Part shown: piece after piece, positions 11,510-29,138 of the stretch
Position numbering within the stretch: position 1 is the stretch's first letter
Layout: the number at the start of each line of letters is the position of its first letter
NCBI RefSeq assembly: GCF_000315625.1
Contig: NW_005434514.1
Coordinates: forward strand, 70,740 to 125,370
Direction of reading: 5' to 3'
DNA from: Guillardia theta CCMP2712
Lineage: Eukaryota; Protista; Cryptophyta
Length of the DNA stretch: 54,631 bases
Translations under genes and position numbers: made by a program
The notes under the pieces: generated by a model
Database searches by the model: none
Told to the model about the DNA's origin: nothing
What the model saw: only the letters and a program-made list of their open reading frames with translations

Positions 11510-13423
11510 TCAAAGATGCTCCTGCAGCGCTGAAGGGAGGACAGATACATCCCCAGTCAGAATCTGCTTCCACGTCAGTCACAATCTCTTCCACCTCTCT
11601 CCCTGTCTCTCTGCCTGCCTGGCTGCCTTTCCCCTCCTTCCCCCTCCCCCTCCCCCTCTCCCTCTCCCTCTCCCTCCCTCCCTCCCCCCTCCCTCCCTCC
11701 GCCCCTTGCTGCCTCCTCCTCGTCTGACCGCTTCTGCAAGTTTCTCCGCCAGCAGCGCGTGGTGTATCAGCCCCCTGCATGCCGTCATCAGCTCCTTCCC
11801 TACCGGGAGAAGTTTTACCGGGAGCCGAGCCCAGTACAGAGCCACACGGGCCTCGACACCCCAGCGACGTCGAGGAGCCTGGGGGGGGGGGGGGTGGTCA
11901 GCAGCGTGAGGGAGGCAGTAGCGGATTGACGTACCTCCCGCACATTGGGATGGAGCCTTCCGGTCCTCGGGGAGGAGAAGCTTTCACGCCCACCACAGCT
12001 CGGGCTGGGTACCAGGCGTCTGATTGCAGCGGCTGAAACAGCGTGCAGAGCTCGTGGTAGATGTTGTCTGCGGACAAGAGATGAGGCTGGCTTCATGGAG
12101 GAGGAGGAGGAGGAGGAGGAGGAGGAGGAGGAGGAGGAGGAGGAGGAGGAAGAGGAGGAGGAGGAGGAGGAGGAAGAGGAGGAGGAGGAGGATTGTCACC
12201 TAGGGCAGAAGTTACATTGGACTCCCTGTTCCATATATCCACGTTCTCTTGTGTGGCCCCACAGATCAGTTGATCAGGGCTAAGATCAAGCCCTCTTCCT
12301 CCTGCCTCCGAGACGAATGGCACTACGTATCGTCCTGATATCACAGGGACCTGAAGCCTCCCGGGATCGCTCTTGCTGCGACTGCAGTCATATAGAGTTA
12401 AACAACTCCAGCCAGCCACCTGCTCTCGTTCCTCAAGAACACGATGTTCTGCGCCTTCACCGGCTTGATCGGCAGCTCCTCCAGCTCTTTGATCCGGATG
12501 CTCCCTGCTCGTCGACGGATGTCAAGGTGACTCACAACCCCTCTGTTTCCCTCACCTGCTCCCGCGCACACCACCAGCTCGTCTGCCTGCTGAAGGTCCA
12601 GCTGGGCGAGACTTTCGACTCTCTCCCGTCGCCACGTCACGTTCCCGAGGGACTGACAAGCGCGAAGCAGCGCCCGAGCATAGACCGGCCCCCGCACCGC
12701 CATGCCGCTCTTGACGAGCAGAGCATGGCTCACGTTCTCCGAAGGCCCCCGGTACTCGCTCTGGTCCACCTCCTTCAGCTCGACCTCAGCAGGGAACATG
12801 GCGGCAGACTTCTTGTAGTCCTCGAGCTGCTTCTTCCCTTTGGTCACCACCCTCAAGATCCCCCTCCCCTCCCCGTTGAAGAAGACCTCCTCCTCGGAGA
12901 ACTGCTGCGCTACTCTTAGCAGCCTCCTGGTAGCCTCCATTCCCTCGTCTCCCTTCCATAGCTTCTTCCCCCTCGGAGTGAGGGGATGCAGCAGCCCTGC
13001 CATGGCCCCTGTCGCGCCTCCCTGCCCCACGTCCTGCTCGTCGACTATCACACAGTCTACCTTGCCCGAAGACATTCTGAGAATGTTATAGGTGATCGCA
13101 AGACCCACCATCCCTCCTCCGACGAGCACGATCCTCTTGTGCGCCCCCTCCTCGCATGCAGCAACTATACGAAAGGCTCTTGTACCAGTCCTCTGGGCAG
13201 ATAAGGATTTCGTAGCTGTTGGATTGTGGACAGACTGGAACGTCAAGGGAAAATGGCAGGGAGCAGGGAGAGGTTTGGAGGGATGTGGAGAAGTGGATGG
13301 TATGAAGGAGGGACGAGGGTGAAAGTATGAACAGAAACATGTTGAAGGTGACCTTGAGGAGGAGGAGGAGGAGGAGGAAGGGGGGAGGAGCAGGAGCAGG
13401 AGCAGGAGGGCTTGTGTAGCCAT
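11510..13423 (-). CDS. FAD-dependent oxidoreductase (DAO/glycine oxidase/MnmC-like family) with a probable bipartite plastid leader
   Basis: Rossmann motif IVLVGGGMVG, then GATGAMAGLLHP and LICGATQE. The spliced C-terminus reads TGLGSR|GLIHHALLAEKLAEA|ILTGDVSVLPSALQEHL*. The N-terminus is MATQALLLLLLLL followed by a Ser/Pro-rich segment. Confidence 0.85.
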
Positions 13424-13955
13424 CGTCCCCCACGGATTCTTGGTTGGGGGTGACTATGACAGAGGGGGTAGAAGAAGGGAATAGAAGGGGTGGGGGTGAT
13501 CGATGCGGCCAATGAGGGGAGCAAGGATGACTAAGGAAGTCGATGGGGAGAGGAGAGGAGAGGAGAGGAGAGGAGAGGAGAGGAGAGGAGAGGAGAGGAG
13601 AGGAGAGGAGAGGAGGAGGGGNNNNNNNNNNNNNNNNNNNNNNNNNNNNNNNNNNNNNNNNNNNNNNNNNNNNNNNNNNNNNNNNNNNNNNNNNNNNNNN
13701 NNNNNNNNNNNNNNNNNNNNNAGGGGAGGGGAGAGGAGAGGAGAGGAGAAGATGGTAGAATGAGGGAGGAGAATGGAGCTGTGACATAGAAAGGAGAGGG
13801 AGAGGTGTGTGTTTGGGGAGAGGGGGGATAGAGGAAAGGAGGATATTCGATAGATGGAAGATGAGGGGAGGGGAGGTAGGTTGACAGTGAGGACAGGAAA
13901 TGAGAGGAGGAGGAAGAATCGCCTGGAGGACGGGGAAGATGATTGCTGAGGTAGG

Positions 13956-16900
13956 ATGAAGATGTCTATCGATCAAGACAGCACAAGGTGCCTACGAACC
14001 CTCTCCCTTCCTCAAAGTCAAGTGTACTCATTCATGCGGATAGGGCGCTGCGGATCTTTATGATTTGCTTCCTAGCCTTGTCCCTGAATGCCGGGGGCAA
14101 GGAGCCTAGTCGCTCTTTCCTTCCTTTGCAGGCCGGACATGGCATGAGAGCCAGCGCTGCAGGAGGAGGAGCGCCGATGTGCACATGCTGTGACCTGCGG
14201 CTGCGAGGGGGGAAGGAAATGAAGGATAGGAAGATGAAGAAAGGGGATCGAGGAGAGAAGTCAAAGAGGTAACATGAAATGAGTTTATAGCGGTGGTGAA
14301 GATGTTTCTTGATGATGATGTCGTCTAGGAAGGAAAGTTCTCCGAAAACATACGAGAATCCTGTTATTCAAGCTAAGATAGACAAGAAACGATCCATGAG
14401 GAAACCGAAGGGGCCCGAGACAAAGTCACAGGTTGGCTTGTTGTGCCCAGCATCTTTGTGATGTTGGACGATGAAGGCAAGAAGGCGTATGAAGGAAGAA
14501 GCGAGGAAGAAAATGAAGTTGAGCAACAAGAAGACGAACCTTCGCAGTCTAGGTCAAACTCCTTGTAGAATCGAGAGTCCAACTGATCGCTTCCTTTAGA
14601 GCTGAATTCAAGCTTTCCGAGGTAGGTGGCCAGAATCTCCCTCGATCTCATATATCTATCAACTCCGTTTTCTCCCTCTCAACTCCTAACCATCGAAACA
14701 ACCCCTCCTTTTCATCACCACCATCATCATCAACATCATAATCATAATCACCAACACCACCACCACCACCACCACCACCACCACCATGGTACCTTCATCA
14801 TCATCATCATCTCCTCCTCCTCCTCCACCACCACCTCCTCCTCCTCATTCCCTATCATCACGTCCATCATCGTCGTTATGGTCCGTACTTGCTATTTAAT
14901 TGAAAATGCATCAGGATAGCAGGCAGGAACTGGACATTGAAGACAGGTAAGCTTTCATCAGTATCCGCTTCAAGCCATGTTTTGATTGCCTTCAATTCCT
15001 TGAAGGCTCCAACATGTCTCAAGCTCTTCCTCGCAAGTCAATCTTGACTCTGTTCTGGGATCCCTTCGAACAGGTTGGCCTGTACTGCATGGGTTGTGCT
15101 TTTCTTGACGTTGTGACTGCTGGACAGCGCAACGACATCTGCTCGCCAAATATCAAGACAAGACAGAAAGCGCAAGCCAGGTGAAGGGGGAGAGCGGGCA
15201 AGTAGCGAGGAGAAGAGCCAGTGAAAGTTCATCTTGATCAGACTTGTTCGGATTCTGTCGGACGTTTGTCTTGAAAGTCGCAACGAGACATCTCCCAAAG
15301 GAAGCAACTCGAGCTCCATGGAGCTGGTAAGAGAGTGCGACGTGACATGAAGCTTGTAAGGCTTTTTCCTCCTCTTAGGTTGAGTCCTTCCCGGACTTGT
15401 TGTACGCATGTGAGAGGCTCGTGAAGGGCCTGACTTCTCCCACCCAGTCGTCGTATGAGGTGAGAAAGGGTCGAGGTTATGAGCTGGGAGGTCCATGGGG
15501 TAGAGGTTATGAGCTGGGGTGGTGTTTATGAGCTGAGAGGGTGAAGTTTGAATCGGCAGGGCTTTATGGAGATGTTGGGAAAAATGCTTCGGCACTTCAA
15601 CGGGAGCAAAAAGAGTTTGGCAATCTTTCAACCTTCATACCTGCTGTCACTAGTAGACAAGCTCTTGCATCCTAGCGAGGTCAGTCAATCCCTTTAAGAC
15701 ACTTTCAAGTCTTAGATTCCGTATTGTAGAGAGAGAAAGACCCAACTGTATTGGCAACTGGTAGGGTGCGAGCAGGTCTGTTCTTTTTGTTCCTTTTTCT
15801 TCTATGTTACCTTCTCTTCTCTTCTCGTCTCTTCTCTTCTCTTCNNNNNNNNNNNNNNNNNNNNNNNNNNNNNNNNNNNNNNNNNNNNNNNNNNNNNNNN
15901 NNNNNNNNNNNNNNNNNNNNNNNNNNNNNNNNNNNNNNNNNNNNTCTTCTCTTCTCTTCTCTTCTCTTCTCTTCTCTTCTCTTCTCGTCTCCTCGATTCC
16001 GTTTTCTTTTCTTACTGACAACAAACAGTTTTGGTGTTATGCAATTGCTGGGATGATTGTTTCAAAGAAGATTTAAATGCAATCGGTGTGTGAAATCTTT
16101 TGCCTATAATAATCGCATTTATGCTCACTTGTGAACAAGCTTCCAAATCCCTGCTGGAGATCCTGCAATCAGTTCCTCTAATAGGATGGAACAAGTTGGA
16201 ATATCAAAGGATTTCCTTGTGTGCTCACTCGTTTCTGCAGGCCAATATCACTTGCTGCTCTGGGAACGATTGATAAAATTCTGCCGTCGTTGGACAAGAA
16301 ACACTTCCGGAAGAAGTTTGTAGTCTACTTTACAGCATGTCATCGTTGATTTCATTCCTCAGCCTCCTCCCGAGCATCTGCAAAGGGGTATCCCAGTTGA
16401 GCACAAAGGTGATTTCTTTTTGCGATTTGACGCCGAAGATTTGGAATGCTCAACCTTGCGATCATGTCATTGGTTGATATTGTGCATGATTGTCATTGTT
16501 TGATACTTCTGACTGATTGTTGTTCATTGCTACGTCTCAAATCATGTCACATGTTGATACATCTCATGTTTCAACCTTGCTCCTTGCTCTTTCCTCGATG
16601 GACTTTCCATGACATCTTTCCTGCCCACAGATCGACCTCGACGTTCCTCTCCTTCTCCTCATCATCGCGCTAGAGCGGCACGGACTTGAAAATGACGAGC
16701 TCAAGAAGCAGCTGAAGAGCCTCGAGGGCTTCGGGGGAGGCGGGATCCTCCATGCAGAGAAGAGCATCGTTGCCGCCGCTCCCATCCTCAACCAGGCCAA
16801 GTCTGCTGACTCGTCCCTGCATCCGATATGGGAACAGGTCAGTAGTGGGGAATGGCAGAGGAGGAGGAGAATGGGAAGATAAGGATAGGAAGGAGGGGGA

Positions 16901-19900
16901 AACGGAGGGAGGTGGGGGAGGACAAAGTACTGGCGGTTTTGTTAGTGGATCTGATTGGAGTAGAAGACGGGTCAAGTGCCAGACGGAGTCGGCAAGAGCG
17001 GCAGGAAGGACGAAGAGGAGTGGGGAACGAGGAGGAGGAGGAGGAGGAGGAGGAGGAGGAGGAGGAGGAGGAGGTGCGGGAGGGGGGGGAGGGGGACAGG
17101 AAAAAGAGTTGTAGTGTAAGGAGGCAATGGCAGGGCTACGTGGGCAAATGATCGGAATGACTGTGATAGTACAGGTTGTGAGATCGATCGCAAGTGAAGG
17201 AAGAGAGGTCGAGAAGGGAGGAGACTTGACGTCGACTTTCTCCAAGAGGTTCAGTGCACTATGGCAGCACTGCGTTTCCCAGCAGACCATCGGCTTCAAG
17301 CTCCAGCTCCTCTCCTTGTGCTGGAAAGTTTTCCCATCGGAGGTGGCGACTGAGAATGTTTCTTCCCTGTCGCTGAGAGTTGGTGCTTGCAGCGGCTCCC
17401 CTTCATCTTTCCAAACAGCATCTCCTGTATTCTAGAGGGTTCTAAAGGTTCTGCTGCGACGGTGAAGGTCGTTGGATGAGTTTTTGTATCTCAAGTCTGA
17501 CGTGAGTGTCAGCTGAACAAGAATTTGACTCAATGGATGGAAAGAAAGATCTCTGTTGCGCTCCCATCGGACGTTTGCTATCAGTGAGACGTGTACTTCT
17601 ATGCGCCAAAGTTTTCTTCTAGTGAATCTCTGTTTCTTCCGCCTCCAAGTTTTGTTCTGTTCTCTCTTCAAGTGTTGTTCTGTTCTTCCTTCAAGTAATG
17701 TGCTGTTCCTGAAATTTCTGCCTCAGTTTGGCTTCTACAATGTTGAAGAAGAATCCCAACTTTGACAAGAAGAGCCGAACGCAAGTCACCAAGTCGCTGC
17801 TCGCAGGCATGAATTCAACTCAACTGGTCGGCTACATCAAACTTGCCCTCGCTTCATTCAGCGACTCGACGAAGCTGCAGTTGTCGAACAAGCACGTTTC
17901 ATCCCCCCAAGATGTCGAGGAGATAAGGCGAGAGATGCTGGAGGAGGCCTTGAGAGCTATCGCTGTCCTCCCTTCCAACGTCACATCCCGTGCCCCGACA
18001 GTGAACGACTTTCTGTTCTTCCTCTGCAGACATTCCTTCTTCATCGGCGGGTCTTCCAAGGATTGGAAACAGCTGCTGCCTTCCTACATGCAAGGATCGT
18101 GCGAGTTGACCCTACTCGATCTAGTCGGCAGCTTGTCAAAAGCAAGCAGAAACCTCTGCGTCGACCGACTGTTCGGCCTGCTGATCTCAACGAGGGTCAA
18201 CCTTCCCGTCAGAGTCTCAAACTCTTCTCAGGTCAGCAGCGGCCCCCTTACAACTCCGAGCGACGTGGAGGAGGTCTGCAACAAGATCGTGGAGGGAGGG
18301 AGCAAGAAGATTTCCCTTGAGACTGCTCTGACTGAGGAGCAACGGAGAAAGCGAAGGAAACTGACCGAGTTCAAAAGCATCCTCCTCAAGGTGGCAGAGG
18401 AGGAGGAGAAGGGGAAAGGGAAAAGGAAGCGGGAGGAGAAAAAGAAAGAGAAGAGAGAGGAGAAGGAAAAAGTGTCATCCCCGAGAGTCAAGTTGAGCAG
18501 CGAGGTTTCACAGCTCCTCTCGTTCATCTCTCTCCTCCAGGTACCTGACCTTTCCGTCCTCCTCCGGTGAGCTGACGTCCTCCTTCAAAGCTGAAAACGC
18601 CAGGTGAGCTGGACGAGCTTCTGTCCGACCTCGCAGGCTACCTGGAGGATTTATGGGCTCACAGTAGCGTCAAGGCAGGGGAGGAGGAGGAGAAGATGGA
18701 GCTGCTGTATTGCAACCTCCTCACTCACCTCCTCAGCAAGGAGTCTTCTATCCTGCGGGAAGTTTCCATCAGCTCGATGAAGAACGTCGCTTCCTCCTGC
18801 TCGCACGTCAGCCTCAGGATCATGACCTGGGTCTTGCAGTCGACGGCGCTGCGGGGCAAGCTGCCGTTCTTTCGCTCCTTGCAAGAGCTTGACGAAGGAG
18901 GCAGACAGGCAGAGGAAGGGCAGGGGGGCAAGAAAGGGGGAGAGGAAGAGAAGGAGGAGGAGGGGGAGTCGAGCGATGCTATGGAGATCGACGTCTCCAG
19001 GTCGACCAACGAGTCGAGCATCGATTTTGATGCGCTGAGCCCTGACCAGAAGCTTGGGGAGAAGAGGTAGTTTCTTTCCGTCGTAGTCCTCCTTGACCCA
19101 CGTCTCCTCCTCTCTCCTCCTCCTTCACCACCACCTCATCCTCCTCCACCACCTCTACCTCCTCCTCCATGCCATCACCACCACCACCTCCTCCTCCTCC
19201 TCCCCCTTGCCCTTCTCATCCTTGCCCTCCTGCTCTCCATCGTCTATCCCTCTCCATCCTCCTCGTTGCAGCTTCTTCAACTGATGTACATGTTTGTCGG
19301 ACAGCGAGGAAGAAAAGAGCGAAAGATTCAGCATTCCCCTATCTCAGGCTGTCAGTTTTCTTTTCACGAATGCCTCCCCTTTGCTCTGCTCTGACCTACC
19401 TACCTCGCTCCCCTCCTTCCCTCCTCCCCTTCAGTCCACTCTCTCTCCCTCCTCTCTCTCCCTCCTCCCCTTCCTCTCCTCCACTTCAATCCGTCCTGTG
19501 AATCGTTGGCTGCAGGAGTCTGAAGATCTCCAGTATCTGGACAAGACTGTAACGATGTGGGTCTCCTCTACTTTCCTCTCCTGCGAGCTTGACTAGTCGC
19601 AGGGCGCTCTCCTCCAAGCGCGGGGAAGCAGGCGCAGGACCGAATCAGCTGGAATGGGAGCATTTCCGATCGAGGATGGTAGAGATGCTGGTAAGCTTGA
19701 GAACCTCAGTCCTCTGACCAGTTTCTCTTCCCCATCCATCCTCCCCCTCCCCCCTCCTCCTCTACTTCCATCCTCCCCCTTCCCCCTCCTCCTCTACTTC
19801 CATCCTCCCCCTCCCCCCTCCTCCTCTACTTCCATCCTCCCCCTCCCCCTTCCTCTTCTACTTCCATCCTCCCCCTTCCTCCTCTCTTCACCTCCTTCTT

Positions 19901-21297
19901 CTAACCTTCTCCTTTCCCATCTCGTTCTTGCGCAAAGCAGTTTGCCCGCCTCTTCTCACTCCTTTCCCCCCTCCTCTCCCCTAATCTTCTCCGGACCTCC
20001 TCCTCCTCCTCCTCCTCCTCCTCCTCACTACCTTTCCTTATCACTTCCCCACTTTCCTCTTCCTCCATGACTCTGCCTCTGCCTTCTCCTGTCCCTCCCG
20101 ACTGACTTCGTGCCTGGAGAAACTTTGGGTCTTGTCCCATCATTCAGACCATCAGCAAATACTTGAGACCACAGCAGCTCTACTGGAAGTTTTGTACCAG
20201 TGAGCCCCACCTCGCGTCACTTTGACGTCTTTCTTTCTGACCCTCCTTGTCAAGGTGTCACTCGGACCCTGTCATGGTCAAGAGTGGTCTACGAGACAAG
20301 ATCTTTCATCTCGTGAGTTCGTCTTTTCGATCCTCCCACCCTCATTGTTGGTCGCCAAGCTCATCAGCAAGGACTTCTTTCCCTCGGGAACCTTCACCAC
20401 GTCCTCTGACGTGTCTGATACGTGAACTTCGTCTGTCTCCTCCCTCCTCCACTGACTTGCGTCTCAAGGGCCTTGATAATCTTGAACAACACGCTCCAGC
20501 TCCTCTCCCGGCCCTCCTCCTCCTCCTTACCAGCCTTCCGTGAAGCTGTATGAAGCGCTTTGACCTTCCTGTTCGGGTGGACAGCTGACAGCACGAACAG
20601 GCAACAAGGGCCATCTTTTACACCCTGCGGTATTTTGCTCCTCCTCCCACTCCTCCTTCCCTCCTCTCCTCTCCCTCCTCCTCCTGAACCTCCTTCCCGC
20701 CCTTGCCTTGGCTTTCTCTTGACATTTCTCGCTCAGGTGTATCCCACCTAACAGCCCAGCTGGGTCGAAGGCCTTGCCGCTGATCAACGCCTCTCTCACG
20801 ACCTTCCTCTTCACCCGCAAACTTTCTCTGCATGCCGACGCCTTCAAGTACATCTTCGCTCACTTCCCGCACCTCACCCGCCAGGTACCTCCCCGACCCC
20901 TATCCCAGCTGAGGTTGACAGGCGTTTCTCAGCTCCTCCCGACGGTGTTGGCTGGGATTGCCGGCGCCCGGTCCGACTTCCGCAAGATGGATGCGGCGAT
21001 CATGGTGGAGGTGAGCTGGGAGTTCGGGGGGGATGGCCGGGCGGAGCTGACGAGCTTCAGGATGTCAAACTCAACGAAGAGAACCCGGGAGGAACGGCAG
21101 AAGCCTGGGAAAAGGTTGAGCTGAGGGATGTGGAGGTTGTCAGGCTTGACTCGGAGCAGGCGCAAAGATCGCTGGAGGAGCTGGGAAGAGGAGCGAAGAG
21201 GAGCACAACGAAAGGGAAGAGGATGAAGAGAGCTATTAGGATCGTGAGCAGGCTGACGCAGGAGCGGAGAGGGTTGGAGAAGCAGACAGGGCGGTAG
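13956..21297 (+). CDS. POL5: DNA polymerase phi / Pol5 / MYB-binding protein 1A family nucleolar factor, with N-terminal signal peptide and LRLRGG leader
   Basis: Spliced motifs match the family: LTLFWD...ICSPNIKTRQKAQARLV, LYACERLVKGLTSPTQSSYE|GFMEML, NFDKKSRTQVTKSLL, FLCRHSFF, LLTHLLSKESSILRE and HFRSRMVEML. The 5' exons join in frame from ATG 13956 through canonical GT-AG introns. The 3' end is approximate. Confidence 0.75.
19730..19885 (+). repeat. ~30-bp pyrimidine-rich minisatellite (CTACTTCCATCCTCCCCCTCCCCCTCCTCCT-like) x ~5, intronic
   Basis: CTACTTCCATCCTCCCC recurs at ~30-nt spacing inside a Pol5 intron. Confidence 0.8.
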
Positions 21298-21639
21298 AGA
21301 TTTACTTGCCAGCCGAAGAGAGGAAAATTCAACATGACGACAAAAGTTGGGGAGAGGAGCTGGATGGGATTGAGGGAACGAGAGGGAGAGGAACGGGGGC
21401 AGGGAGAGAGGGGGAGGCAAAGCATAAGAAGAGAGCAGGAGAGAAGGAGGAGAGGAGGAGGAGAGGAGGAGGAGAGGGAGAGAGGGAGAGAAGGAAAGGA
21501 GTTAGACATCAAACTTGCTCTCTCATCCTCAAACGTTGGTGGTGAAGTTTCGAATATCAGCTTGAGTTCCTTCTTTTTCCATCCTCTTCGCGTCCTCCGC
21601 GTTCGCGTCCGGTCTGGTGACATGTCAACAGGCAGCCTG

Positions 21640-22213
21640 CTGATGAAGCAGCCTTACTTGGCTTTCTCCTCCTGCTCCTCCGTCGTCTTCCCTTCCACTC
21701 CACCTGCTCCTGCACATTATTCGCAATTCGATCCTCCACCCTCTCCCTCCCTCCTTCCTTCTCCCTTCCTCCCTCCCTCTCTTTAGATCCTCACTTGTTT
21801 CCTGCCTCTTTCCTCCTTCCTCATCGGCCGTCCTGCATTACACGTCATCACTCCTCCCTCCCCCAACCCCAACCCCCTCCCTCCTCCCCCTCCCCCAACC
21901 CCCTCACTCCTCCTCCTCCTCCTCCTCCCTACCGGGACTTCTTCTGCTGCTCAGCCACAGCTTCCACGTGCTCGTTCTCCTCCAGCTGCCCGTGGTCGTC
22001 GGCAAGGAGGTCAGGCTCTTCCAGCTCCTCCTCCATGTTCGGGTCTCCTCGGAAGGCCTGCCGATGGTCAGGAGCGACGGAGGGTGCGAGGGATCTGGGG
22101 GAGATGGGCAAGAGGAGAGGAGGGGAGAGGGAGAGGGAAGGAGAAGTGAAGAACGCAAACGGAACGAGGGCAGAGAGGGGATTGAAATCTATGGTGCACA
22201 AGCAGGAACAAAC

Positions 22214-22264
<51 letters not shown>

Positions 22265-22302
22265 AAAAGAAGCAGAAAAAGGAGTAGAAGCAGGAGCAGC
22301 AA

Positions 22303-22366
<64 letters not shown>

Positions 22367-23070
22367 TCTCTCTACCTCCAGTACTCCTTTGATATCGCTG
22401 GCTTTCGTGCCTCGCAAGTATTCCTGTTCGGTTATGAGGACAAGGACGCCGGGAGCTGCCGACTCACCTTAGTGACTTCCCGTATCTCATCCCACGACCT
22501 CGCCTGCAGCAACTCGTCAGAATGGCAGAGGGGGTGAGAAGAAGAAAATTTCAGATTCAGATCACCCGCGCGACCCTCTCGTCGAAGTCAGTGTTGTACA
22601 GCACGTCCAGGCTTGACTCGCATCGACTTTGGGCTGAAATCTCCGCCGGACCCTCCTTGCCTCCCTGACCTCTCCCGTCCCGCAGCTCCTCCACCGTCGC
22701 CTCCGAGGACCGCAACTTGGGCGAGACGTCGGTGGCAGCCGATGGTCTGTCACTTGAGGCAGCGCCCGCGTCCTTCTCCTCCTCGTGCTCGAGGGTCGAG
22801 CTGACGAAGTCCTGGGGGGTTCCCAGGAAGGCTTTGACGCGCGCCAAGAGACGCTCTGCCGCTGCCATGACGGACCCGAGAGTCGTCGCTTCCTCTTGAT
22901 TCGGCTGCTTCCTGCTGTCCCCTGAGCTGGACCTTGCACGTTCGGAGTCTCGGGACTCTGGAGCAGCCAAGCCGAAGCATGCGGAGAGGAGAGGAGGACG
23001 GTAGTGGAGGAAGCGGCCGAGGAAGCTCCCGACGCTCTGGTGCTTGGAAAGTCCTTCTTCCCGACTTTTC
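21640..23070 (-). CDS. Hypothetical acidic protein, possibly the 3' part of the TPR gene
   Basis: GT-AG exons encode MAAAERLLARVKAFLG...NTDFDERVAR, RSWDEIREVTK, EYLRGTKASDIKGVLE and AFRGDPNMEEELEE. Boundaries are uncertain. Confidence 0.4.
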
Positions 23071-23099
23071 ATTGAGCTGGAGAAAACTTTTCAGCTGGG

Positions 23100-26000
23100 C
23101 AATAGCAGGAAAGCAGCATCGTACCGGTACTTGAGGGCGAGCGAGACGATCTTCTGATGGCGAGGGAGGAGCAGGTCGTACCTGGCATGCCCTTTCACTC
23201 GCTCCTCACTCGCTCCTCCTCCAACCTCTCTCTTGCTCTGACTGAATCAAGCTCCTGAGCTCTGCTGTAGAGCACATCGGCTTGCCGGATCTGGAAGGCA
23301 GCTGCTTAGCACCGCGCCTCCTCAGCTGGGAATTCTCACCTCCTTTCTGCTCAGCTCGTGGAAGAGCCCCTTGTGAATCAGCGCGTCTGGCATGTGACAC
23401 GTCATCACAAACCCCCAGCTCACCCCCAGCACAGGCCCTCACCCATGTTGTCCTCGTGGAAGTCAGTAGCCCTCGCATAGAACTCCTCTGCCATCTCCAC
23501 GTCTCCCTTCACCTCGCACACCTGCAATCCTCCTCACCCTCCGACTCTTCTCAGCTCCCTCCACCTGGGCAAACCCAACGAGCGCGTGAATCTGCCCTGG
23601 ATTCCTCCTCAACGCTCTCTTGTACATCCGCTCGGCCCTGAAGGGGCATGATCTCCTGAAGCAGCAGCGAGGCGAGAGGAGGAGAGGGGAGGAAGACGAG
23701 GAAGGAGAGACGAGCAGAGCAGAGGGGCAAGGGAGCGGAGAGGAACGGTTGGGGGCGGGAAGCAGGTTCACCCATCCGTATCCATCTTTGTCTCGAGCAG
23801 GAGGCGCCCGTACTGAGTCATATCGTCTTAGCTGGTGAAGAGGAGGAAGCAGGGGTCTTTACAGTCAGGCAGGTGGGGATGTGGAAGGGGTCGAGCTGGA
23901 GAGCCTTGTTGAGAAGCTCTAGAGGCATGTCAGCAGAGCGGGGGAGGGACTTGCTGCTCGGCAGACCTGCAGCCTTGTCGATCCGACCTCGCTCAGCCTG
24001 TAGAGGAGGATGAGAAGAAGAACTCAGAGCCAACGTTCTCCTACCTGGAGGATCCCAAAGTTGTGGCATGTTGTCACCATGTTCTCTTCCGCGTTGCGGG
24101 ACGTCATGGCACGACGATACATGCTCTCAGCAGCCTCATACTCTGATTGGGCACCAACAATGAGCGAGGACACGCTGTAACTGTTGAACCCCCACCTTTC
24201 AGCTGGGCCAGAACGCTTCCCATGTTGTTCAGCAGCTCCGACTTGTGAGGGTCATACTGCAGCGCCAGGTTGTACATGGCTCTGACAGGCGGTGAGAGGA
24301 GGAGTTGCTGAGAAGTGAACCCCTCACTTGGCAAGTTGCAGGTCCCTCCTCCCGTCATGCAAGAGAGCGCCGAAGTTGTACAAGACAGCTGGAAGACACT
24401 CGCTGTCACATCAACACACACCCCAGCTGAAGCCCACCTGCGTACTCCAGCCGAGATGGAAGGAGCCCAGTGGAATTTCTCAGGTCGTGATATTCCACGG
24501 TGAAATATCCAGGGGCGGACTGAATTTCAAAATGACAATTTCAAACCTTGATTGCAGAATATTTCAATGTGAACGACCCACCGGTGCCCATCCTACTGCA
24601 CGTTGATACAGTTCCTCCGCACTTGACAGCCAAGTAAGGCAGGAAGAGAGAATAAGAGAAGAGGAGAGGAGAGGAGAGGAGAGGAGAGGAGAGGAGAGGA
24701 GAGGAGAGGAGAGGAGAGGAGAGGAGAGGAGAGGAGAGGAGAGGAGAGGAGGGGNNNNNNNNNNNNNNNNNNNNNNNNNNNNNNNNNNNNNNNNNNNNNN
24801 NNNNNNNNNNNNNNNNNNNNNNNNNNNNNNNNNNNNNNNNNNNNNNNNNNNNNNTCCGCATTAGATCCTGCTCGTCGGACTTCTCCACTCGGGTATTGTC
24901 CCTGTTTCTACCCTGTGCCAGTATCCAACGCCCGTGTTATGTTCAATCGAAGATGTGGTTTTACAGTGGTCCTGGTTGTGTGTGTGGTCGGTAGCAGCAC
25001 AAAAAGCACAATGCAGGGCGCGCAGGACGCAAGAATAGTGCGGGACCGAAGGAGATTGGATAGATAGATGAAGAATGTGAAACAGAATCTGTAGAACCTA
25101 ACAGACGGTATATACTAGACGAGGGAGAAAAGTCTTGATGGCTTTGATGGGGAATGAGCAAGAAGTGTAAACTTAATGAGCAGGTGGACTTTGTTCCAGA
25201 GGAGAGGAGAGGGAGGAGGAGAGGAGAGGAGAGGAGAGGAGGAGAAGAGAGAAGAAGCCAACAGAAGGAGAGCTGATAGCTGATGGAAACGGAGTATGGG
25301 AGCAGGATGTGGAAGAAGACGGGGAGGTGGAAAGGAAGGAGGAGGAGGCGGCAGACTTCGACATCTGTCCTTCCCTCACCGATCCAAGTTGTCATTGACC
25401 GTGTGATGAAGGGCTGCAAGGTTTCCCAGGACAAGAACATGGTTGGGGTCGACCTGCACCAACGTCATACCCGACGGCAGCAGCCGGGAAGGAAACTCAC
25501 GAGCAGAGCTCGCTTGTACATCTCCTCCGCCGCCACGGCATCATGGAGAACCTGCGGGTCGTCACAGGAAGGACGGGAGGCAGCAAGGAGAGCTCTTACC
25601 TCGAAGAGAAAGTTTCCGTAGACCAGCGCGACCAGAGGATCATTGGGAGCGACCGCAAGCGCAGAGCTGAAAGAGGCGTTGGTCTGCGGTGAACCCAGTG
25701 AGTGCTAGGAAGGACCAGCTCCTCCTGCTCACCTTGGAGACTGCCTCCTCGTCCTCCAGCACCAGTCTCATGAAGTGGAAGAACTCCATGATGTTGGTGA
25801 TGTTGCTCGGATTCGCCGCTAGCTCAGCCTTCAAGGAGCTTTCGATCTCCTCGATCTGGTCGCGTCCTCTCGTCAACGAGCAGCTGAGACAGACAGCCCT
25901 CACCTCCTTCGTAACGTCATCCTGCTTCGCCTCCCCCTGCTTGGCCCCGTCGATCAACGCTTCAACCGGGAACTGATATCGACTTTTGTTCGCAGGCAAC

Positions 26001-26127
26001 TTCAGGTCGTGGCTGCCCGCGTTCAAACCTAGTAGACAAGTCAACTAAAAGCTCCTTTATGATCAAGATCAGGATCATAAGGAGGGAAGAGGGGAGGAGG
26101 AGGAAGATGGGGTAGCGATTTACCCAT
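23100..26127 (-). CDS. Tetratricopeptide-repeat (TPR) protein, multi-exon
   Basis: Spliced TPR consensus units: ALAVAPNDPLVALVYGNFL, AEEMYKRALL|VDPNHVLVLGNLA, AEELYQRAV, AMYNLALQYDPHKSELLNNMG, AESMYRRAM, LLNKALQLDPFH, AERMYKRALRRNPGQ. The gene may extend upstream toward 28085. Confidence 0.8.
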
Positions 26128-26139
26128 GCTGGAGGGGTT

Positions 26140-28085
26140 CGACGAGAGTGACGCTTGCGAGTATGTGGCAGTTAAGCTTGCGTTCCTGAGCTTATGTTCA
26201 GATTCGTTGCTATGCCGCACAGCAACTCACTTTCGAGCAACGGTCGAGCCTCCTCCTGCAGTCTGAAGTCCCCCGAAGAATTTCCTTGAATGTCAAGATG
26301 AGGGGAAAGGTGATGGTAGGGACAACCAAAGTTTCACCAGCATCCATTGCTGACGTGTCACGTTTATCATGCGAAGTTCCTGAAGATTGCAGTTGCACTT
26401 TTGAACAAGTTTCGATCAGAATTGACATCTAAACTCGAGATCGAACATGCAAATCAACTTGCACAAGCTCATGGCCGCAGACGGTTCGAGGTATTCTCAT
26501 CATCACTTCAACATCTCCTTTCTCACCTGCGGTCGCATTCCCTTTGCTCTTTTGCCGCACAGTCTCATTCCTGGGAGCTGCAGTGGCAGCTGAACTGGCG
26601 TGTCAAAGTCCAAAGTCAACGGATCACAGAGACCGGAGGTTTGAGGTGTGTTGGCCGTCTGCAGGAGACTCGCATGAGTGGATTTACAACAATGACATGC
26701 GATGGAAACCTTAGAAATGCTGCTGACTTTGACGCTCTGTTCGATTTCCAACCATTCCAGTCAGCAACGGTGAGCTCAGCAGCCTTTCGCGTCTCACCGG
26801 GTTAGCGCGATGCTCGCATGCATCATCGATGGTGTTGGCAGGATGGTTGACCTTGTGATCTTTCAGGGTATCAGAGGACTTGTCGCAACGTGGAAGTAGA
26901 ACACTAACCCTGCTGCAAGGGGATGGAGGATGGAGGAACCACGGGGGAGGATATGCTCTCATTCCTTGACAGTGATCCTTGGGCCTAAAGGAAGACTTTT
27001 TCATGTACATGTACAGTCAGTGGCTTTTGTTACCGATCTCGATTGAGGGTTCATATGATTGTCGGCAGAGATTTTCTGTTTGCAAGCAAGATCACAACAG
27101 GCTGGAGTTTATCCCCAACAACGTTACCTTGGCAGGTTCAGCAGACACAGGGGGCAACTGGGCAGGGCGATTTCAGCACAGGAGGACAGAAACGTCAAGA
27201 GTTCGAGTCGTCCATACCTTGGATGCGGTAGACGAAGTCCCATCTTCCACAGGGCCCGAGACCTGCTGTTCTACCTCACCTTGCCTATGATGGTGCCCCC
27301 TCCATATGCAGGCTCAACTTACATCATTCTGGTCTGATTTTCCTCCTCGAAGGTGCAAGGTACAGAATTTCCTTCCTGGTAATGTGACCCCTGCACTGCC
27401 ACTCCACGTCCTAGTCAAGCACTGGTGAAGCGCATGTCCCTGATTTGTGCCCGATATCTTCCATGCGCAGATTACCAATATTATGATGGAGATTGTAAAT
27501 CTCCTTGATGCATATCCCTTGTTCATCTAGATCGCATCAAACAGTAGCCTTCTCCTTCGCGTCCGCTCCTCTTCCTCGCTGTAGGACCTCAATCTCCACG
27601 ATTGCCCGAAAGCTCTTGACAGTGTTGAAGAATGGAAGTCGATCCAAAGATGAAGAGCTGAAGTCGATCAGAAGGCGATTAGCTGAGGTCGGTCGGAATA
27701 ATCTCAGCCTACAGGTGATTCAGTTGCAACACTTTGCTAATGGGTCAGGTATGTAATTCGAGTGACCACATGTTTCCAGGGCAATCAACTGCATCTTCCC
27801 CTCGCTCCTGCCTTCGCAGCTTAATCAAGTTGCAATTTCTCGGGTCCGTCCTATCTGCCCCTCCCTTTTGTCTTGACTGCTCCGCATTGGAGATCGAAAG
27901 CTTTCGCAACTTCGAGAAGATCGAATCGAAAGATGATTGTAAACTTTTCTACATGCACTATCCTTTCCACTTGGATCCATCTGCTCTTGTATCTGCTGCC
28001 CTTTCGCGCCCATCATCCTCTCTCCCCCCTCCTCCCCTCCGCCCCCTCCTGCTCCTGCACTCCTTGACCAACCTGTTGTGCCCAT
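26140..28085. other. Probable short coding exons of uncertain strand (5' extension of the TPR gene or a separate hypothetical gene)
   Basis: Non-repetitive sequence with many splice-like signals and no recognisable domain. Confidence 0.3.
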
Positions 28086-28404: not shown

Positions 28405-28580
28405 AAACTGTTGATCTACCAAGACCGTCCTGGGTTGAGGTGTCATCCGTGACAGATGCGAACTTGTTTCTTTATGTGCATGTCAATGTGATGAAAACCT
28501 GCTCTATGTTCCTTCATCGTCAACACTCATCCAGAATCTGACGGCCTCTCTTCCAGGACGACCCTTTGGTGACCTCCAAG

Positions 28581-29138
28581 ATGGCAGACGACGAGCCCGT
28601 TGAAACCGAAGAACAGCCCCAAGTCCCCGCTGAGGGCGGAGTCATGGATCTCAACTCTGCGTTGAAGCAGGCGTTGAAGAAGGCTCTGATCCACGACGGG
28701 GTCGCCCGTGGTGTGCGCGAGGCCGTCAAGGCTCTCGATCGCCGCCAGGCACATCTTTGCATTCTCGCGCAGGACTGCGACTCTGCCGAGTATGTTCGCC
28801 TTGTCGAGGCTCTCGCTCAGGAGAGCGGCATCAAGATCGTCAAGGTTCCTGATGGCAAGACTCTGGGCGAGTGGGTTGGTCTCTGCAAGCTTGACCGCGA
28901 GGGCAAGCCCAGGAAGGTAGTCAAGTGCTCGTGCGCTGTCATCAAGGACTGGGGCGAGCAGGTACAGCCACCTCCTCATCCTCCATGTTCTTTCTCCTGT
29001 CTTCTCTGCCTCAATATCCCTTGTTATCTCGCAGTCTCTCGCCCTCCTTGCCTCGTTCTGTGAGTCCCTCGTGCTGACTGGCTTGCGATGCAGAGCGAGG
29101 CCAAGAACTTCCTCAGCGAGCAGCTCGCCAGCTCTTAG
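28581..29138 (+). CDS. RPS12: 40S ribosomal protein S12 (eS12)
   Basis: [32 protein letters not shown]...[32 protein letters not shown]. Intron 28962-29093, then last exon [14 protein letters not shown]. Confidence 0.97.

What the first reader, a model, noticed from the sequence alone, without database searches (positions are those of the whole stretch)
13956..15074. Nucleolar Pol5/MYBBP1A homolog with a signal peptide: candidate nucleomorph-targeted ribosome biogenesis factor
Seven small exons join in frame through GT-AG introns (first intron 13988-14043). They give MKMSIDQDSTRALRIFMICFLALSLNAGG-KEPSRSFLPLQAGHGMRASAAGGGAPMCTCCD-LRLRGG, then a long K/R-rich tract (KEMKDRKMKK...KKRSMRKPK...RRRMKEEARKKMK), then the Pol5 domain. 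A nucleolar protein has no use for an ER signal unless it crosses the complex-plastid membranes. In cryptophytes and diatoms a bipartite leader lacking +1 Phe directs proteins to the periplastidial compartment. Inference: a host-encoded factor for the endosymbiont nucleus, with an NLS/NoLS behind the leader. This model is invisible in the ORF track.
Basis: partly seen in the sequence, partly recalled or inferred. Interest (0 to 1): 0.8.

Follow-up and report, generated by a model that had tools for sequence, protein, structure and literature searches.

The report
Algal Pol5 gene with import leader
In the alga Guillardia theta, RNA data confirm that a ribosome-assembly gene of the Pol5/MYBBP1A family begins with small extra exons encoding a secretory-type import leader that the public gene model lacks, so it is a good but unproven candidate for a host-made factor sent to the alga's relict second nucleus.

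Summary
The protein belongs to the Pol5/MYBBP1A family (Pfam DNA_pol_phi, 85 bits on the public model). The organism is Guillardia theta CCMP2712.

The public model GUITHDRAFT_119875 starts at Met75. It therefore lacks the signal-peptide-like N-terminus, the 32-residue spacer and the LRLRGG motif.

The leader fits the published cryptophyte rule for periplastid rather than stromal targeting: a hydrophobic core of 11 residues, small residues at -3/-1, and no aromatic residue or Leu at +1. A 99-residue tract with 34% Lys/Arg follows it. The convergent neighbour, a TPR gene, starts with the same layout (signal peptide, spacer, LHLRGG, Lys).

Not shown: localisation, signal-peptide prediction by a trained tool, whether a second leaderless Pol5 exists, and red-algal ancestry.

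Earlier notes of this scan reported LRLRGG-ended leaders on many other genes of this genome; Pol5 was not among them. This is a new member of a known kind, of moderate interest.

The parts
13900..13959 (+). Upstream ORF of 19 codons in the observed 5'UTR. It has an in-frame second ATG at 13939, and its TGA (13957-13959) overlaps the main ATG as ATGA.
   Evidence: Sequence. Transcript contigs X1 and X2 reach back to 13895.
13956..13987 (+). Exon 1: start codon and residues 1-11 (MKMSIDQDSTR), the n-region of the signal-peptide-like segment.
   Evidence: Joint 13987/14044 in X1, X2 and X3. In-frame TGA at 13947 upstream.
14044..14098 (+). First part of exon 2: residues 12-29, with hydrophobic core IFMICFLALSL and c-region NAGG. 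Plausible cleavage after A27 or G29.
   Evidence: Hydropathy maximum 2.85 over 11 residues at 15-25; -3/-1 rule met at A27 and G29. No trained predictor was run.
14099..14194 (+). Spacer, transit-peptide-like (residues 30-61). It starts with Lys30, is rich in Ser/Ala/Gly and has few acidic residues.
   Evidence: Composition.
14195..14212 (+). LRLRGG (residues 62-67), identical to the last six residues of ubiquitin, followed by Lys68.
Evidence: Six-frame scan.
14213..15013 (+). Basic tract, residues 68-166 (34% Lys/Arg, net about +23). It is encoded by the end of exon 2, exons 3-6 (14329-14431, 14477-14552, 14600-14621, 14915-14946) and the first 8 nt of exon 7. The public model starts inside it at Met75 (14234).
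   Evidence: Joints in three runs; composition; public start.
15014..15073 (+). Met167 and the start of the Pol5 domain (MSQALPRKSILTLFWDPFEQ) in exon 7 (15006-15073). This is probably the ancestral start codon.
   Evidence: Residues 167-299 have DNA_pol_phi clusters as nearest Atlas neighbours (score 0.97). The ancestral-start reading is inference.
15128..19690 (+). Exons 8-25 of the Pol5 body, RNA-supported. These include five exons around the 100-N gap (15730-16408) that the public model lacks. The 17461/17507 versus 17467/17513 junction is ambiguous by two residues.
   Evidence: Pfam DNA_pol_phi on exon 18591-19064 and on P0005.
20120..21297 (+). Exons 26-32 and the stop codon (TAG, 21295-21297). 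The 19690/20120 joint is RNA-supported. The exons 20255-20539 are inferred from open frame and GT-AG only. From 20760 on the model agrees with the public one, including the basic C-terminal tail.
   Evidence: X2 loose end at 19690.

Best explanation
This is the nuclear gene GUITHDRAFT_119875 of Guillardia theta. Its true mRNA encodes a Pol5/MYBBP1A-family ribosome-assembly protein of about 1290 residues, preceded by a bipartite, periplastid-type import leader.

Shown here: the exon chain, the open frame, the family and the layout of the leader.

Inferred pathway: the signal peptide takes the nascent protein into the ER lumen that surrounds the complex plastid and is cut near A27 or G29. The following 32-residue transit-peptide-like spacer begins with Lys30 and lacks an aromatic residue or Leu at +1. 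It carries the protein across the periplastid membrane by the ERAD-derived SELMA translocon and leaves it in the periplastid compartment instead of passing it on to the stroma. The leader is probably removed at or near LRLRGG. The exposed Lys/Arg-rich tract then acts as a nuclear or nucleolar signal for the nucleomorph. There the protein would do what yeast Pol5 does, namely assist pre-rRNA processing and 60S maturation. Met167, directly in front of the conserved domain, is probably the ancestral start, with the leader exons added upstream.
For: - Spliced contigs from three studies give one and the same chain.
- The frame is open by chance at about 5e-5, and codon usage fits frame 0.
- Pfam DNA_pol_phi scores 85.1 bits on the public model. 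Atlas neighbours are all DNA_pol_phi, also for residues 167-299 alone.
- The organism is G. theta CCMP2712.
- The leader has signal-peptide-like hydropathy and -3/-1 residues, +1 is Gly or Lys, and the basic tract has 34% Lys/Arg.
- Published rules: signal plus transit peptide is required for nucleomorph targeting (PMC6411479); an aromatic residue or Leu at +1 decides stroma against periplastid compartment (PMC4494062).
- Yeast Pol5 is an essential nucleolar 60S biogenesis factor (PMC6795146 and PMC7145529).
- Pol5 is not mentioned among nucleomorph-encoded proteins (PMC6559170).
- An unrelated neighbouring TPR gene has the same leader geometry with LHLRGG followed by Lys.
- Earlier scan notes report the same leader type on many genes. 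These are unchecked leads.
Against: - There is no localisation data, and no SignalP or ASAFind run.
- The n-region of the signal peptide is nearly neutral (two Asp).
- Two upstream AUGs in a uORF overlap the main AUG, so use of the start codon is not proven.
- Contigs cannot exclude a second, shorter transcript that would give a leaderless protein.
- It is unknown whether a separate host Pol5 exists.
- No orthologue N-termini could be retrieved to test conservation of the leader.
- Signals for import into the nucleomorph are not defined in the literature I read.
Confidence: 0.65

Rival explanations
1. One gene serves two compartments. The long form goes to the periplastid compartment and nucleomorph. 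A leaderless form, made from an internal start (Met75 or Met167) or a downstream transcription start, serves the host nucleolus because this is the only Pol5 gene.
For: Met167 sits directly before the conserved domain and is in frame. The uORF overlapping the main AUG could modulate start choice. Intron 5 is long (293 nt) and could hold a second promoter. Dual periplastid/cytosol targeting by alternative initiation has been proposed for a G. theta tyrosyl-tRNA synthetase (PMC4494062). No second Pol5 was found, but none could be searched for.
Against: All three transcript assemblies carry the full leader, and the joint count fits no alternative joint. Many AUGs lie between 13956 and 15014, which makes leaky scanning to Met167 unlikely.
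Confidence: 0.2
2. The leader is not a working import signal. The protein is the ordinary host nucleolar Pol5, and the hydrophobic N-terminus is either not translated (translation starting further down) or not recognised by the signal recognition particle.
For: The n-region is weakly charged, the hydrophobic core is only 11 residues, and there are upstream AUGs. The public annotation chose Met75.
Against: A 166-codon open frame kept across six introns is very unlikely by chance. Its codon usage is coding-like. The exact LRLRGG at the same distance from a signal-peptide-like segment as in the neighbouring gene argues for a selected leader.
Confidence: 0.1
3. The protein is targeted to the plastid stroma or stays in the ER or secretory pathway.
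For: It has a signal-peptide-like N-terminus followed by a transit-peptide-like stretch.
Against: There is no aromatic residue or Leu at the plausible +1 positions (rule in PMC4494062). A helical-repeat pre-ribosome factor has no known role in the stroma or ER (PMC6795146).
Confidence: 0.05

Closest known systems
Nucleus-encoded periplastid/nucleomorph proteins of cryptophytes with bipartite leaders (Gould et al. 2006, as cited in PMC4494062 and PMC6411479)
   Same: Signal-peptide-like N-terminus, transit-peptide-like stretch, no aromatic residue or Leu at +1, and a cargo that is a nuclear or cytosolic housekeeping protein.
   Different: Not localised experimentally. A 99-residue basic tract lies between leader and domain. 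The leader ends in LRLRGG, a feature found in no paper of the library searched.
Yeast Pol5 / human MYBBP1A (Pfam PF04931, DNA_pol_phi)
   Same: Family match well above the curated cut-off, with a basic C-terminal tail.
   Different: Very divergent: single exons find no canonical Pol5 by phmmer, and nothing in the PDB. Carries a 166-residue N-terminal extension with a secretory-type leader.
LRLRGG-ended leaders noted earlier by this scan in the same genome (for example s1-430463, s1-433748)
   Same: Signal peptide, short spacer, then LRLRGG.
   Different: Those notes place the motif directly before the mature domain. Here a long basic tract follows it. The notes are unchecked AI leads. My only independent replicate is the neighbouring TPR gene.
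Dual-targeted G. theta tyrosyl-tRNA synthetase (periplastid compartment plus cytosol; PMC4494062)
   Same: A leader-bearing gene whose leaderless form could serve the host compartment.
   Different: No evidence here for a second isoform.

Membership tests
Pol5/MYBBP1A (Pfam PF04931 DNA_pol_phi) | Sequence match to the family model above the curated cut-off | tested here: met
   85.1 bits against a cut-off of 27.6 on P0005, residues 281-802 on profile 204-675. 30.4 bits on exon 18591-19064 alone.
Pol5/MYBBP1A (Pfam PF04931 DNA_pol_phi) | N-terminal part of the domain present | tested here: inconclusive
   Pfam's best stretch starts at profile position 204. Residues 167-299 have DNA_pol_phi fragments as nearest Atlas clusters (0.97), which counts as a lead only. 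The five exons missing from P0005 could not be scanned joined together.
Pol5/MYBBP1A (Pfam PF04931 DNA_pol_phi) | Nucleolar residence and a role in 60S maturation | not testable with these tools
   Function is known from yeast (PMC6795146, PMC7145529).
Cryptophyte periplastid-type bipartite leader | Cleavable N-terminal signal peptide | tested here: inconclusive
   Hydropathy and the -3/-1 rule fit. No trained predictor was available.
Cryptophyte periplastid-type bipartite leader | Transit-peptide-like stretch after the signal peptide without an aromatic residue or Leu at +1 | tested here: met
   +1 is Gly28 or Lys30, depending on the cleavage site. The spacer has few acidic residues. Rule from PMC4494062.
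Cryptophyte periplastid-type bipartite leader | Localisation to the periplastid compartment or nucleomorph | not testable with these tools
   Needs GFP fusion or immuno-EM.
Endosymbiont-derived paralogue beside a host copy | Second, leaderless Pol5 in the same genome and red-algal affinity of this one | not tested
   The protein searches found only fragments, and no tool searches the G. theta proteome. The blanks say nothing, because the 1057-residue public protein itself was hidden behind a 278-residue cluster representative.
LRLRGG-ended leader class (scan's own notes) | Signal peptide, short spacer, then L-x-LRGG, recurring on unrelated proteins | tested here: met
   LRLRGG at residues 62-67 here. 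LHLRGG at residues 57-62 of the neighbouring TPR gene, after a signal-peptide-like start. Lys follows in both.

The most novel reading that the evidence does not exclude
LRLRGG is a working mimic of the ubiquitin tail. After passage through the ubiquitin-dependent SELMA translocon, a ubiquitin-specific protease in the periplastid compartment cuts after Gly67. This removes the leader and releases a mature protein that begins with the basic nuclear signal. Cryptophytes lack the diatom periplastid deubiquitinase ptDUP (PMC12412216), so a different, unidentified enzyme would do this. The Pol5 gene would then be one substrate of a general, undescribed leader-processing system.
Probability: 0.3. Interest if true: 0.8.

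Novelty: new member of a known kind. Interest (0 to 1): 0.45.

Why it matters
The nucleomorph keeps its own rRNA genes and some nucleolar proteins, but it must import most assembly factors. Few such imports are identified gene by gene. The public model of this gene lacks the leader, so a screen based on signal peptides would probably have missed it. The corrected model gives a concrete, testable candidate for host-supplied 60S assembly in a relict nucleus. It also adds a case with a clear basic tract behind the leader, which is useful for defining what takes a protein from the periplastid cytoplasm into the nucleomorph. Finally, it adds two more examples (Pol5 and the neighbouring TPR gene) to the LRLRGG-ended leaders that this scan keeps finding.

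Tried and rejected
- My first reading was that the upstream exons were an artefact of purine-rich DNA and that ATG 15014 was the start. One search refuted this.
- Word search with the 271-residue exon found only a 278-residue metagenome ORF. With the leader exon it found nothing. With the full public protein it found nothing, swamped by low-complexity words.
- The whole-library phmmer search with the best-conserved exon found two fragments only: an ENA metagenome ORF and a Hanusia phi fragment.
- The JGI metagenome scan gave no relative.
- PDB sequence searches gave nothing.
- The contig of the close relative is only 877 nt, so no orthologue leader could be read.
- Paper searches for LRLRGG or LRGG with nucleomorph or periplastid, for the gene's accessions, and for Guillardia with Pol5 found nothing.
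- Curtis et al. 2012 is not held.
- The joint 13752 to 18396 (TG..GC) in X1 is a low-complexity GA-repeat artefact and was ignored.
It was replaced by enumeration constrained by contig coordinates and depth bins.

Full report
**What is there.** The window is a eukaryotic nuclear scaffold with 100-N gaps. The finding lies between a divergently transcribed DAO-family oxidoreductase gene (minus strand, start 13423) and the body of a gene with a DNA_pol_phi match.

My first reading was that the true start was ATG 15014 and that the upstream exons were an artefact of purine-rich DNA. Earlier notes of this scan named the organism as Guillardia theta. They also described a class of leaders made of a signal peptide, a spacer and LRLRGG. 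I treated these notes as leads to test.

**The exon chain.** The look-up of sequencing runs listed transcript-like contig sets from several studies that hold about a third of the words of the stretch, as expected for spliced RNA. Read laying on 13730-19700 with X1, X2, X3 and X12 showed the same joints in X1, X2 and X3, with no mismatches. After the stated cut offsets the exons are:
- E1 13956-13987
- E2 14044-14268
- E3 14329-14431
- E4 14477-14552
- E5 14600-14621
- E6 14915-14946
- E7 15006-15073

All introns are GT-AG.
- The frame runs without a stop from ATG 13956 through ATG 15014 (Met167) into the gene body.
- The other two frames of these 498 nt hold 16 and 4 stops.
- Shuffled sequence of the same composition stays open about 5 times in 100,000.
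- Codon usage favours frame 0 in the leader and in the basic tract, and GC3 (0.60-0.64) is close to that of the body (0.68).
- An in-frame TGA at 13947 excludes a longer N-terminus.
- My full model has 24 introns inside the laid stretch, equal to the 14 real joints listed plus the 10 not listed. That count fits the absence of any alternative joint skipping the leader, although the unlisted joints could not be inspected.

The raw-read RNA run gave only five reads, so transcript starts remain unknown.

**The whole gene.** I rebuilt a model of 32 exons and 1290 residues. Contig coordinates and depth bins guided it.
- RNA supports it up to 20120.
- The exons 20255-20539 rest only on open frame and GT-AG.
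- One junction (17461/17507 or 17467/17513) is ambiguous by two residues.

**Identity of organism and gene.** The listing of cluster members showed that a 278-residue metagenome ORF found by word search shares its 90% cluster with EKX33949.1 / XP_005820929.1. This is the hypothetical protein GUITHDRAFT_119875 of Guillardia theta CCMP2712, 1057 residues. The look-up of encoding contigs placed it on JH993124.1 at exactly this locus, ending at my stop codon.

The public protein compares with my model as follows:
- It is identical to my model over residues 75-299, 393-540, 543-995, 1026-1054 and 1146-1290.
- It starts at Met75, inside exon 2, so it lacks the hydrophobic N-terminus, the spacer and LRLRGG.
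- It lacks residues 300-392, which are five exons around an assembly gap.
- It differs in some C-terminal exons where RNA joints support my version.
- No public gene covers 13956-14233.

**Family.**
- Pfam DNA_pol_phi scores 85.1 bits (E 4.6e-24; cut-off 27.6) on the public protein, and 30.4 bits on the single exon 18591-19064.
- The nearest Atlas clusters are all DNA_pol_phi (DNA polymerase V, Myb-binding protein 1A) for the whole protein and for residues 167-299 alone.
- The conserved domain therefore appears to begin right after Met167.
- The protein is very divergent. The best-conserved exon finds only two fragments in 1.84 billion representatives (a close relative at about 90% from an ENA metagenome, and Hanusia phi at 51-56%), and nothing in the PDB.

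**The leader.**
- Residues 1-29: the n-region carries K2, R11 and R14 but also two Asp. The uninterrupted hydrophobic core IFMICFLALSL is 11 residues long (mean hydropathy 2.85). The c-region is NAGG.
- The -3/-1 rule allows cleavage after A27 or G29, so +1 is Gly or Lys, not an aromatic residue or Leu.
- Residues 30-61 form a spacer with few acidic residues that begins with Lys.
- Residues 62-67 are LRLRGG (14195-14212).
- Residues 68-166 are 34% Lys/Arg, with a net charge of about +23.

Published work states that signal plus transit peptides are required for nucleomorph targeting (PMC6411479). It also states that an aromatic residue or Leu at the start of the transit-peptide-like part separates stromal from periplastid proteins (PMC4494062). 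That N-terminal lysines are needed for SELMA passage is my own recollection of Lau et al. 2015; the paper is listed in the references of PMC12136025, and I did not read it.

**An independent replicate in the same window.** A six-frame scan for L-x-LRGG gave three hits:
- this leader;
- an antisense chance match with no signal peptide;
- the first exon of the convergent neighbour on the minus strand (ATG 27526).

The neighbour's first exon reads MNKGYASRRF, then a 13-residue hydrophobic core, then KISG, a spacer, LHLRGG at residues 57-62, and then Lys. The public annotation makes this the start of an 886-residue TPR protein (21529-27526). Two unrelated adjacent genes thus share the geometry of signal peptide, spacer of about 32 residues, L-x-LRGG and Lys. 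This supports the earlier notes' claim that the leader is a recurring type, but it says nothing about how it is processed.

**Mechanism.**
- Shown: the mRNA structure, the open frame, the family and the anatomy of the leader.
- Inferred: co-translational entry into the ER lumen around the plastid; SELMA-mediated passage into the periplastid compartment; retention there for lack of a stromal +1 residue; removal of the leader, possibly at LRLRGG; nucleomorph import through the basic tract; and a Pol5-like role in 60S maturation (yeast data: PMC6795146, PMC7145529).
- The paper re-evaluating nucleomorph-encoded proteins lists several nucleolar and ribosome-assembly factors but never mentions Pol5. 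This fits a need for import but is weak evidence.
- Met167 follows only 8 nt after the start of exon 7. This suggests that the former 5'UTR and six new upstream exons were recruited as a leader (inference).

**Open points and rivals.**
- A 19-codon uORF (13900-13959, with a second in-frame AUG at 13939) ends in a TGA that overlaps the main AUG as ATGA. The next Met of the main frame is residue 3, so reinitiation would give the same leader, but start-codon use is unproven.
- I could not test whether a second, leaderless Pol5 exists.
- The blanks are uninformative, because the 1057-residue public protein itself was invisible to both searches behind a short cluster representative.
- Dual use of one gene through an internal start therefore remains a live rival. 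There is precedent in the proposal for G. theta tyrosyl-tRNA synthetase (PMC4494062).
- Red-algal ancestry could not be tested for lack of homologues.

**Novelty.** Leader-bearing nuclear genes for periplastid and nucleomorph proteins are a known kind, and genome-wide predictions exist (Curtis et al. 2012, cited; not held). This gene is a new member whose leader the public model lacks. No paper in the library mentions the gene's accessions or Pol5 together with Guillardia.

The LRLRGG ending appears in no paper together with nucleomorph or periplastid. This scan has already noted it on many other genes of this genome, so it is not new to the scan. Cryptophytes lack the diatom periplastid deubiquitinase ptDUP (PMC12412216), which leaves open which enzyme would cut such a tail.

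Noticed in passing
window 21529-27526, minus strand (first exon 27526-27314): The public 886-residue TPR gene, convergent with Pol5, starts with a signal-peptide-like segment, a spacer, LHLRGG (residues 57-62; 27358-27341) and then Lys. This is the same leader geometry as Pol5. The function of the protein was not identified beyond TPR repeats.
   Followed up: partly
window 13900-13959, plus strand: A 19-codon upstream ORF with two in-frame AUGs ends in a TGA that overlaps the main start codon (ATGA). It may affect how often, or where, translation of the leader starts.
   Followed up: partly
window 13895-13897: Transcript contigs X1 and X2 stop matching the genome at 13895, next to an AG. A further 5'UTR exon may lie upstream, possibly in or beyond the N gap 13622-13721.
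   Followed up: no
window 15730-16408 and 19066-20760: The public model GUITHDRAFT_119875 omits five RNA-supported exons around the assembly gap (residues 300-392). It also uses different splice sites from the RNA joints at 19305-19690 and 20120.
   Followed up: yes
window 12398-13423, minus strand: The divergent neighbour is a DAO-family oxidoreductase. Its long ORF begins MATQALLLLLLLLPPSSSSSSSS, a Leu-run and Ser-run N-terminus that could be another import leader or just translated repeats. The public model is shorter (198 residues).
   Followed up: no
P0001, P0002, P0004 (ENA metagenome ERZ930071); P0003 (Hanusia phi, EukProt): A close relative (about 90% protein identity, with the same intron read-through) occurs in an environmental metagenome. 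Hanusia phi has a fragment at 51-56% identity in the best-conserved exon, so the protein evolves fast within cryptophytes.
   Followed up: partly
method: The full-length public protein sits in a cluster whose representative is a 278-residue ORF fragment. Both the length-windowed word search and the representative library therefore missed it. Blanks from these searches should not be read as absence for intron-rich eukaryotic genes.
   Followed up: yes
window 28566-29063, plus strand: A gene of the L7Ae family, which looks to me like ribosomal protein eS12, has no leader. It is presumably the host cytosolic copy.
   Followed up: no
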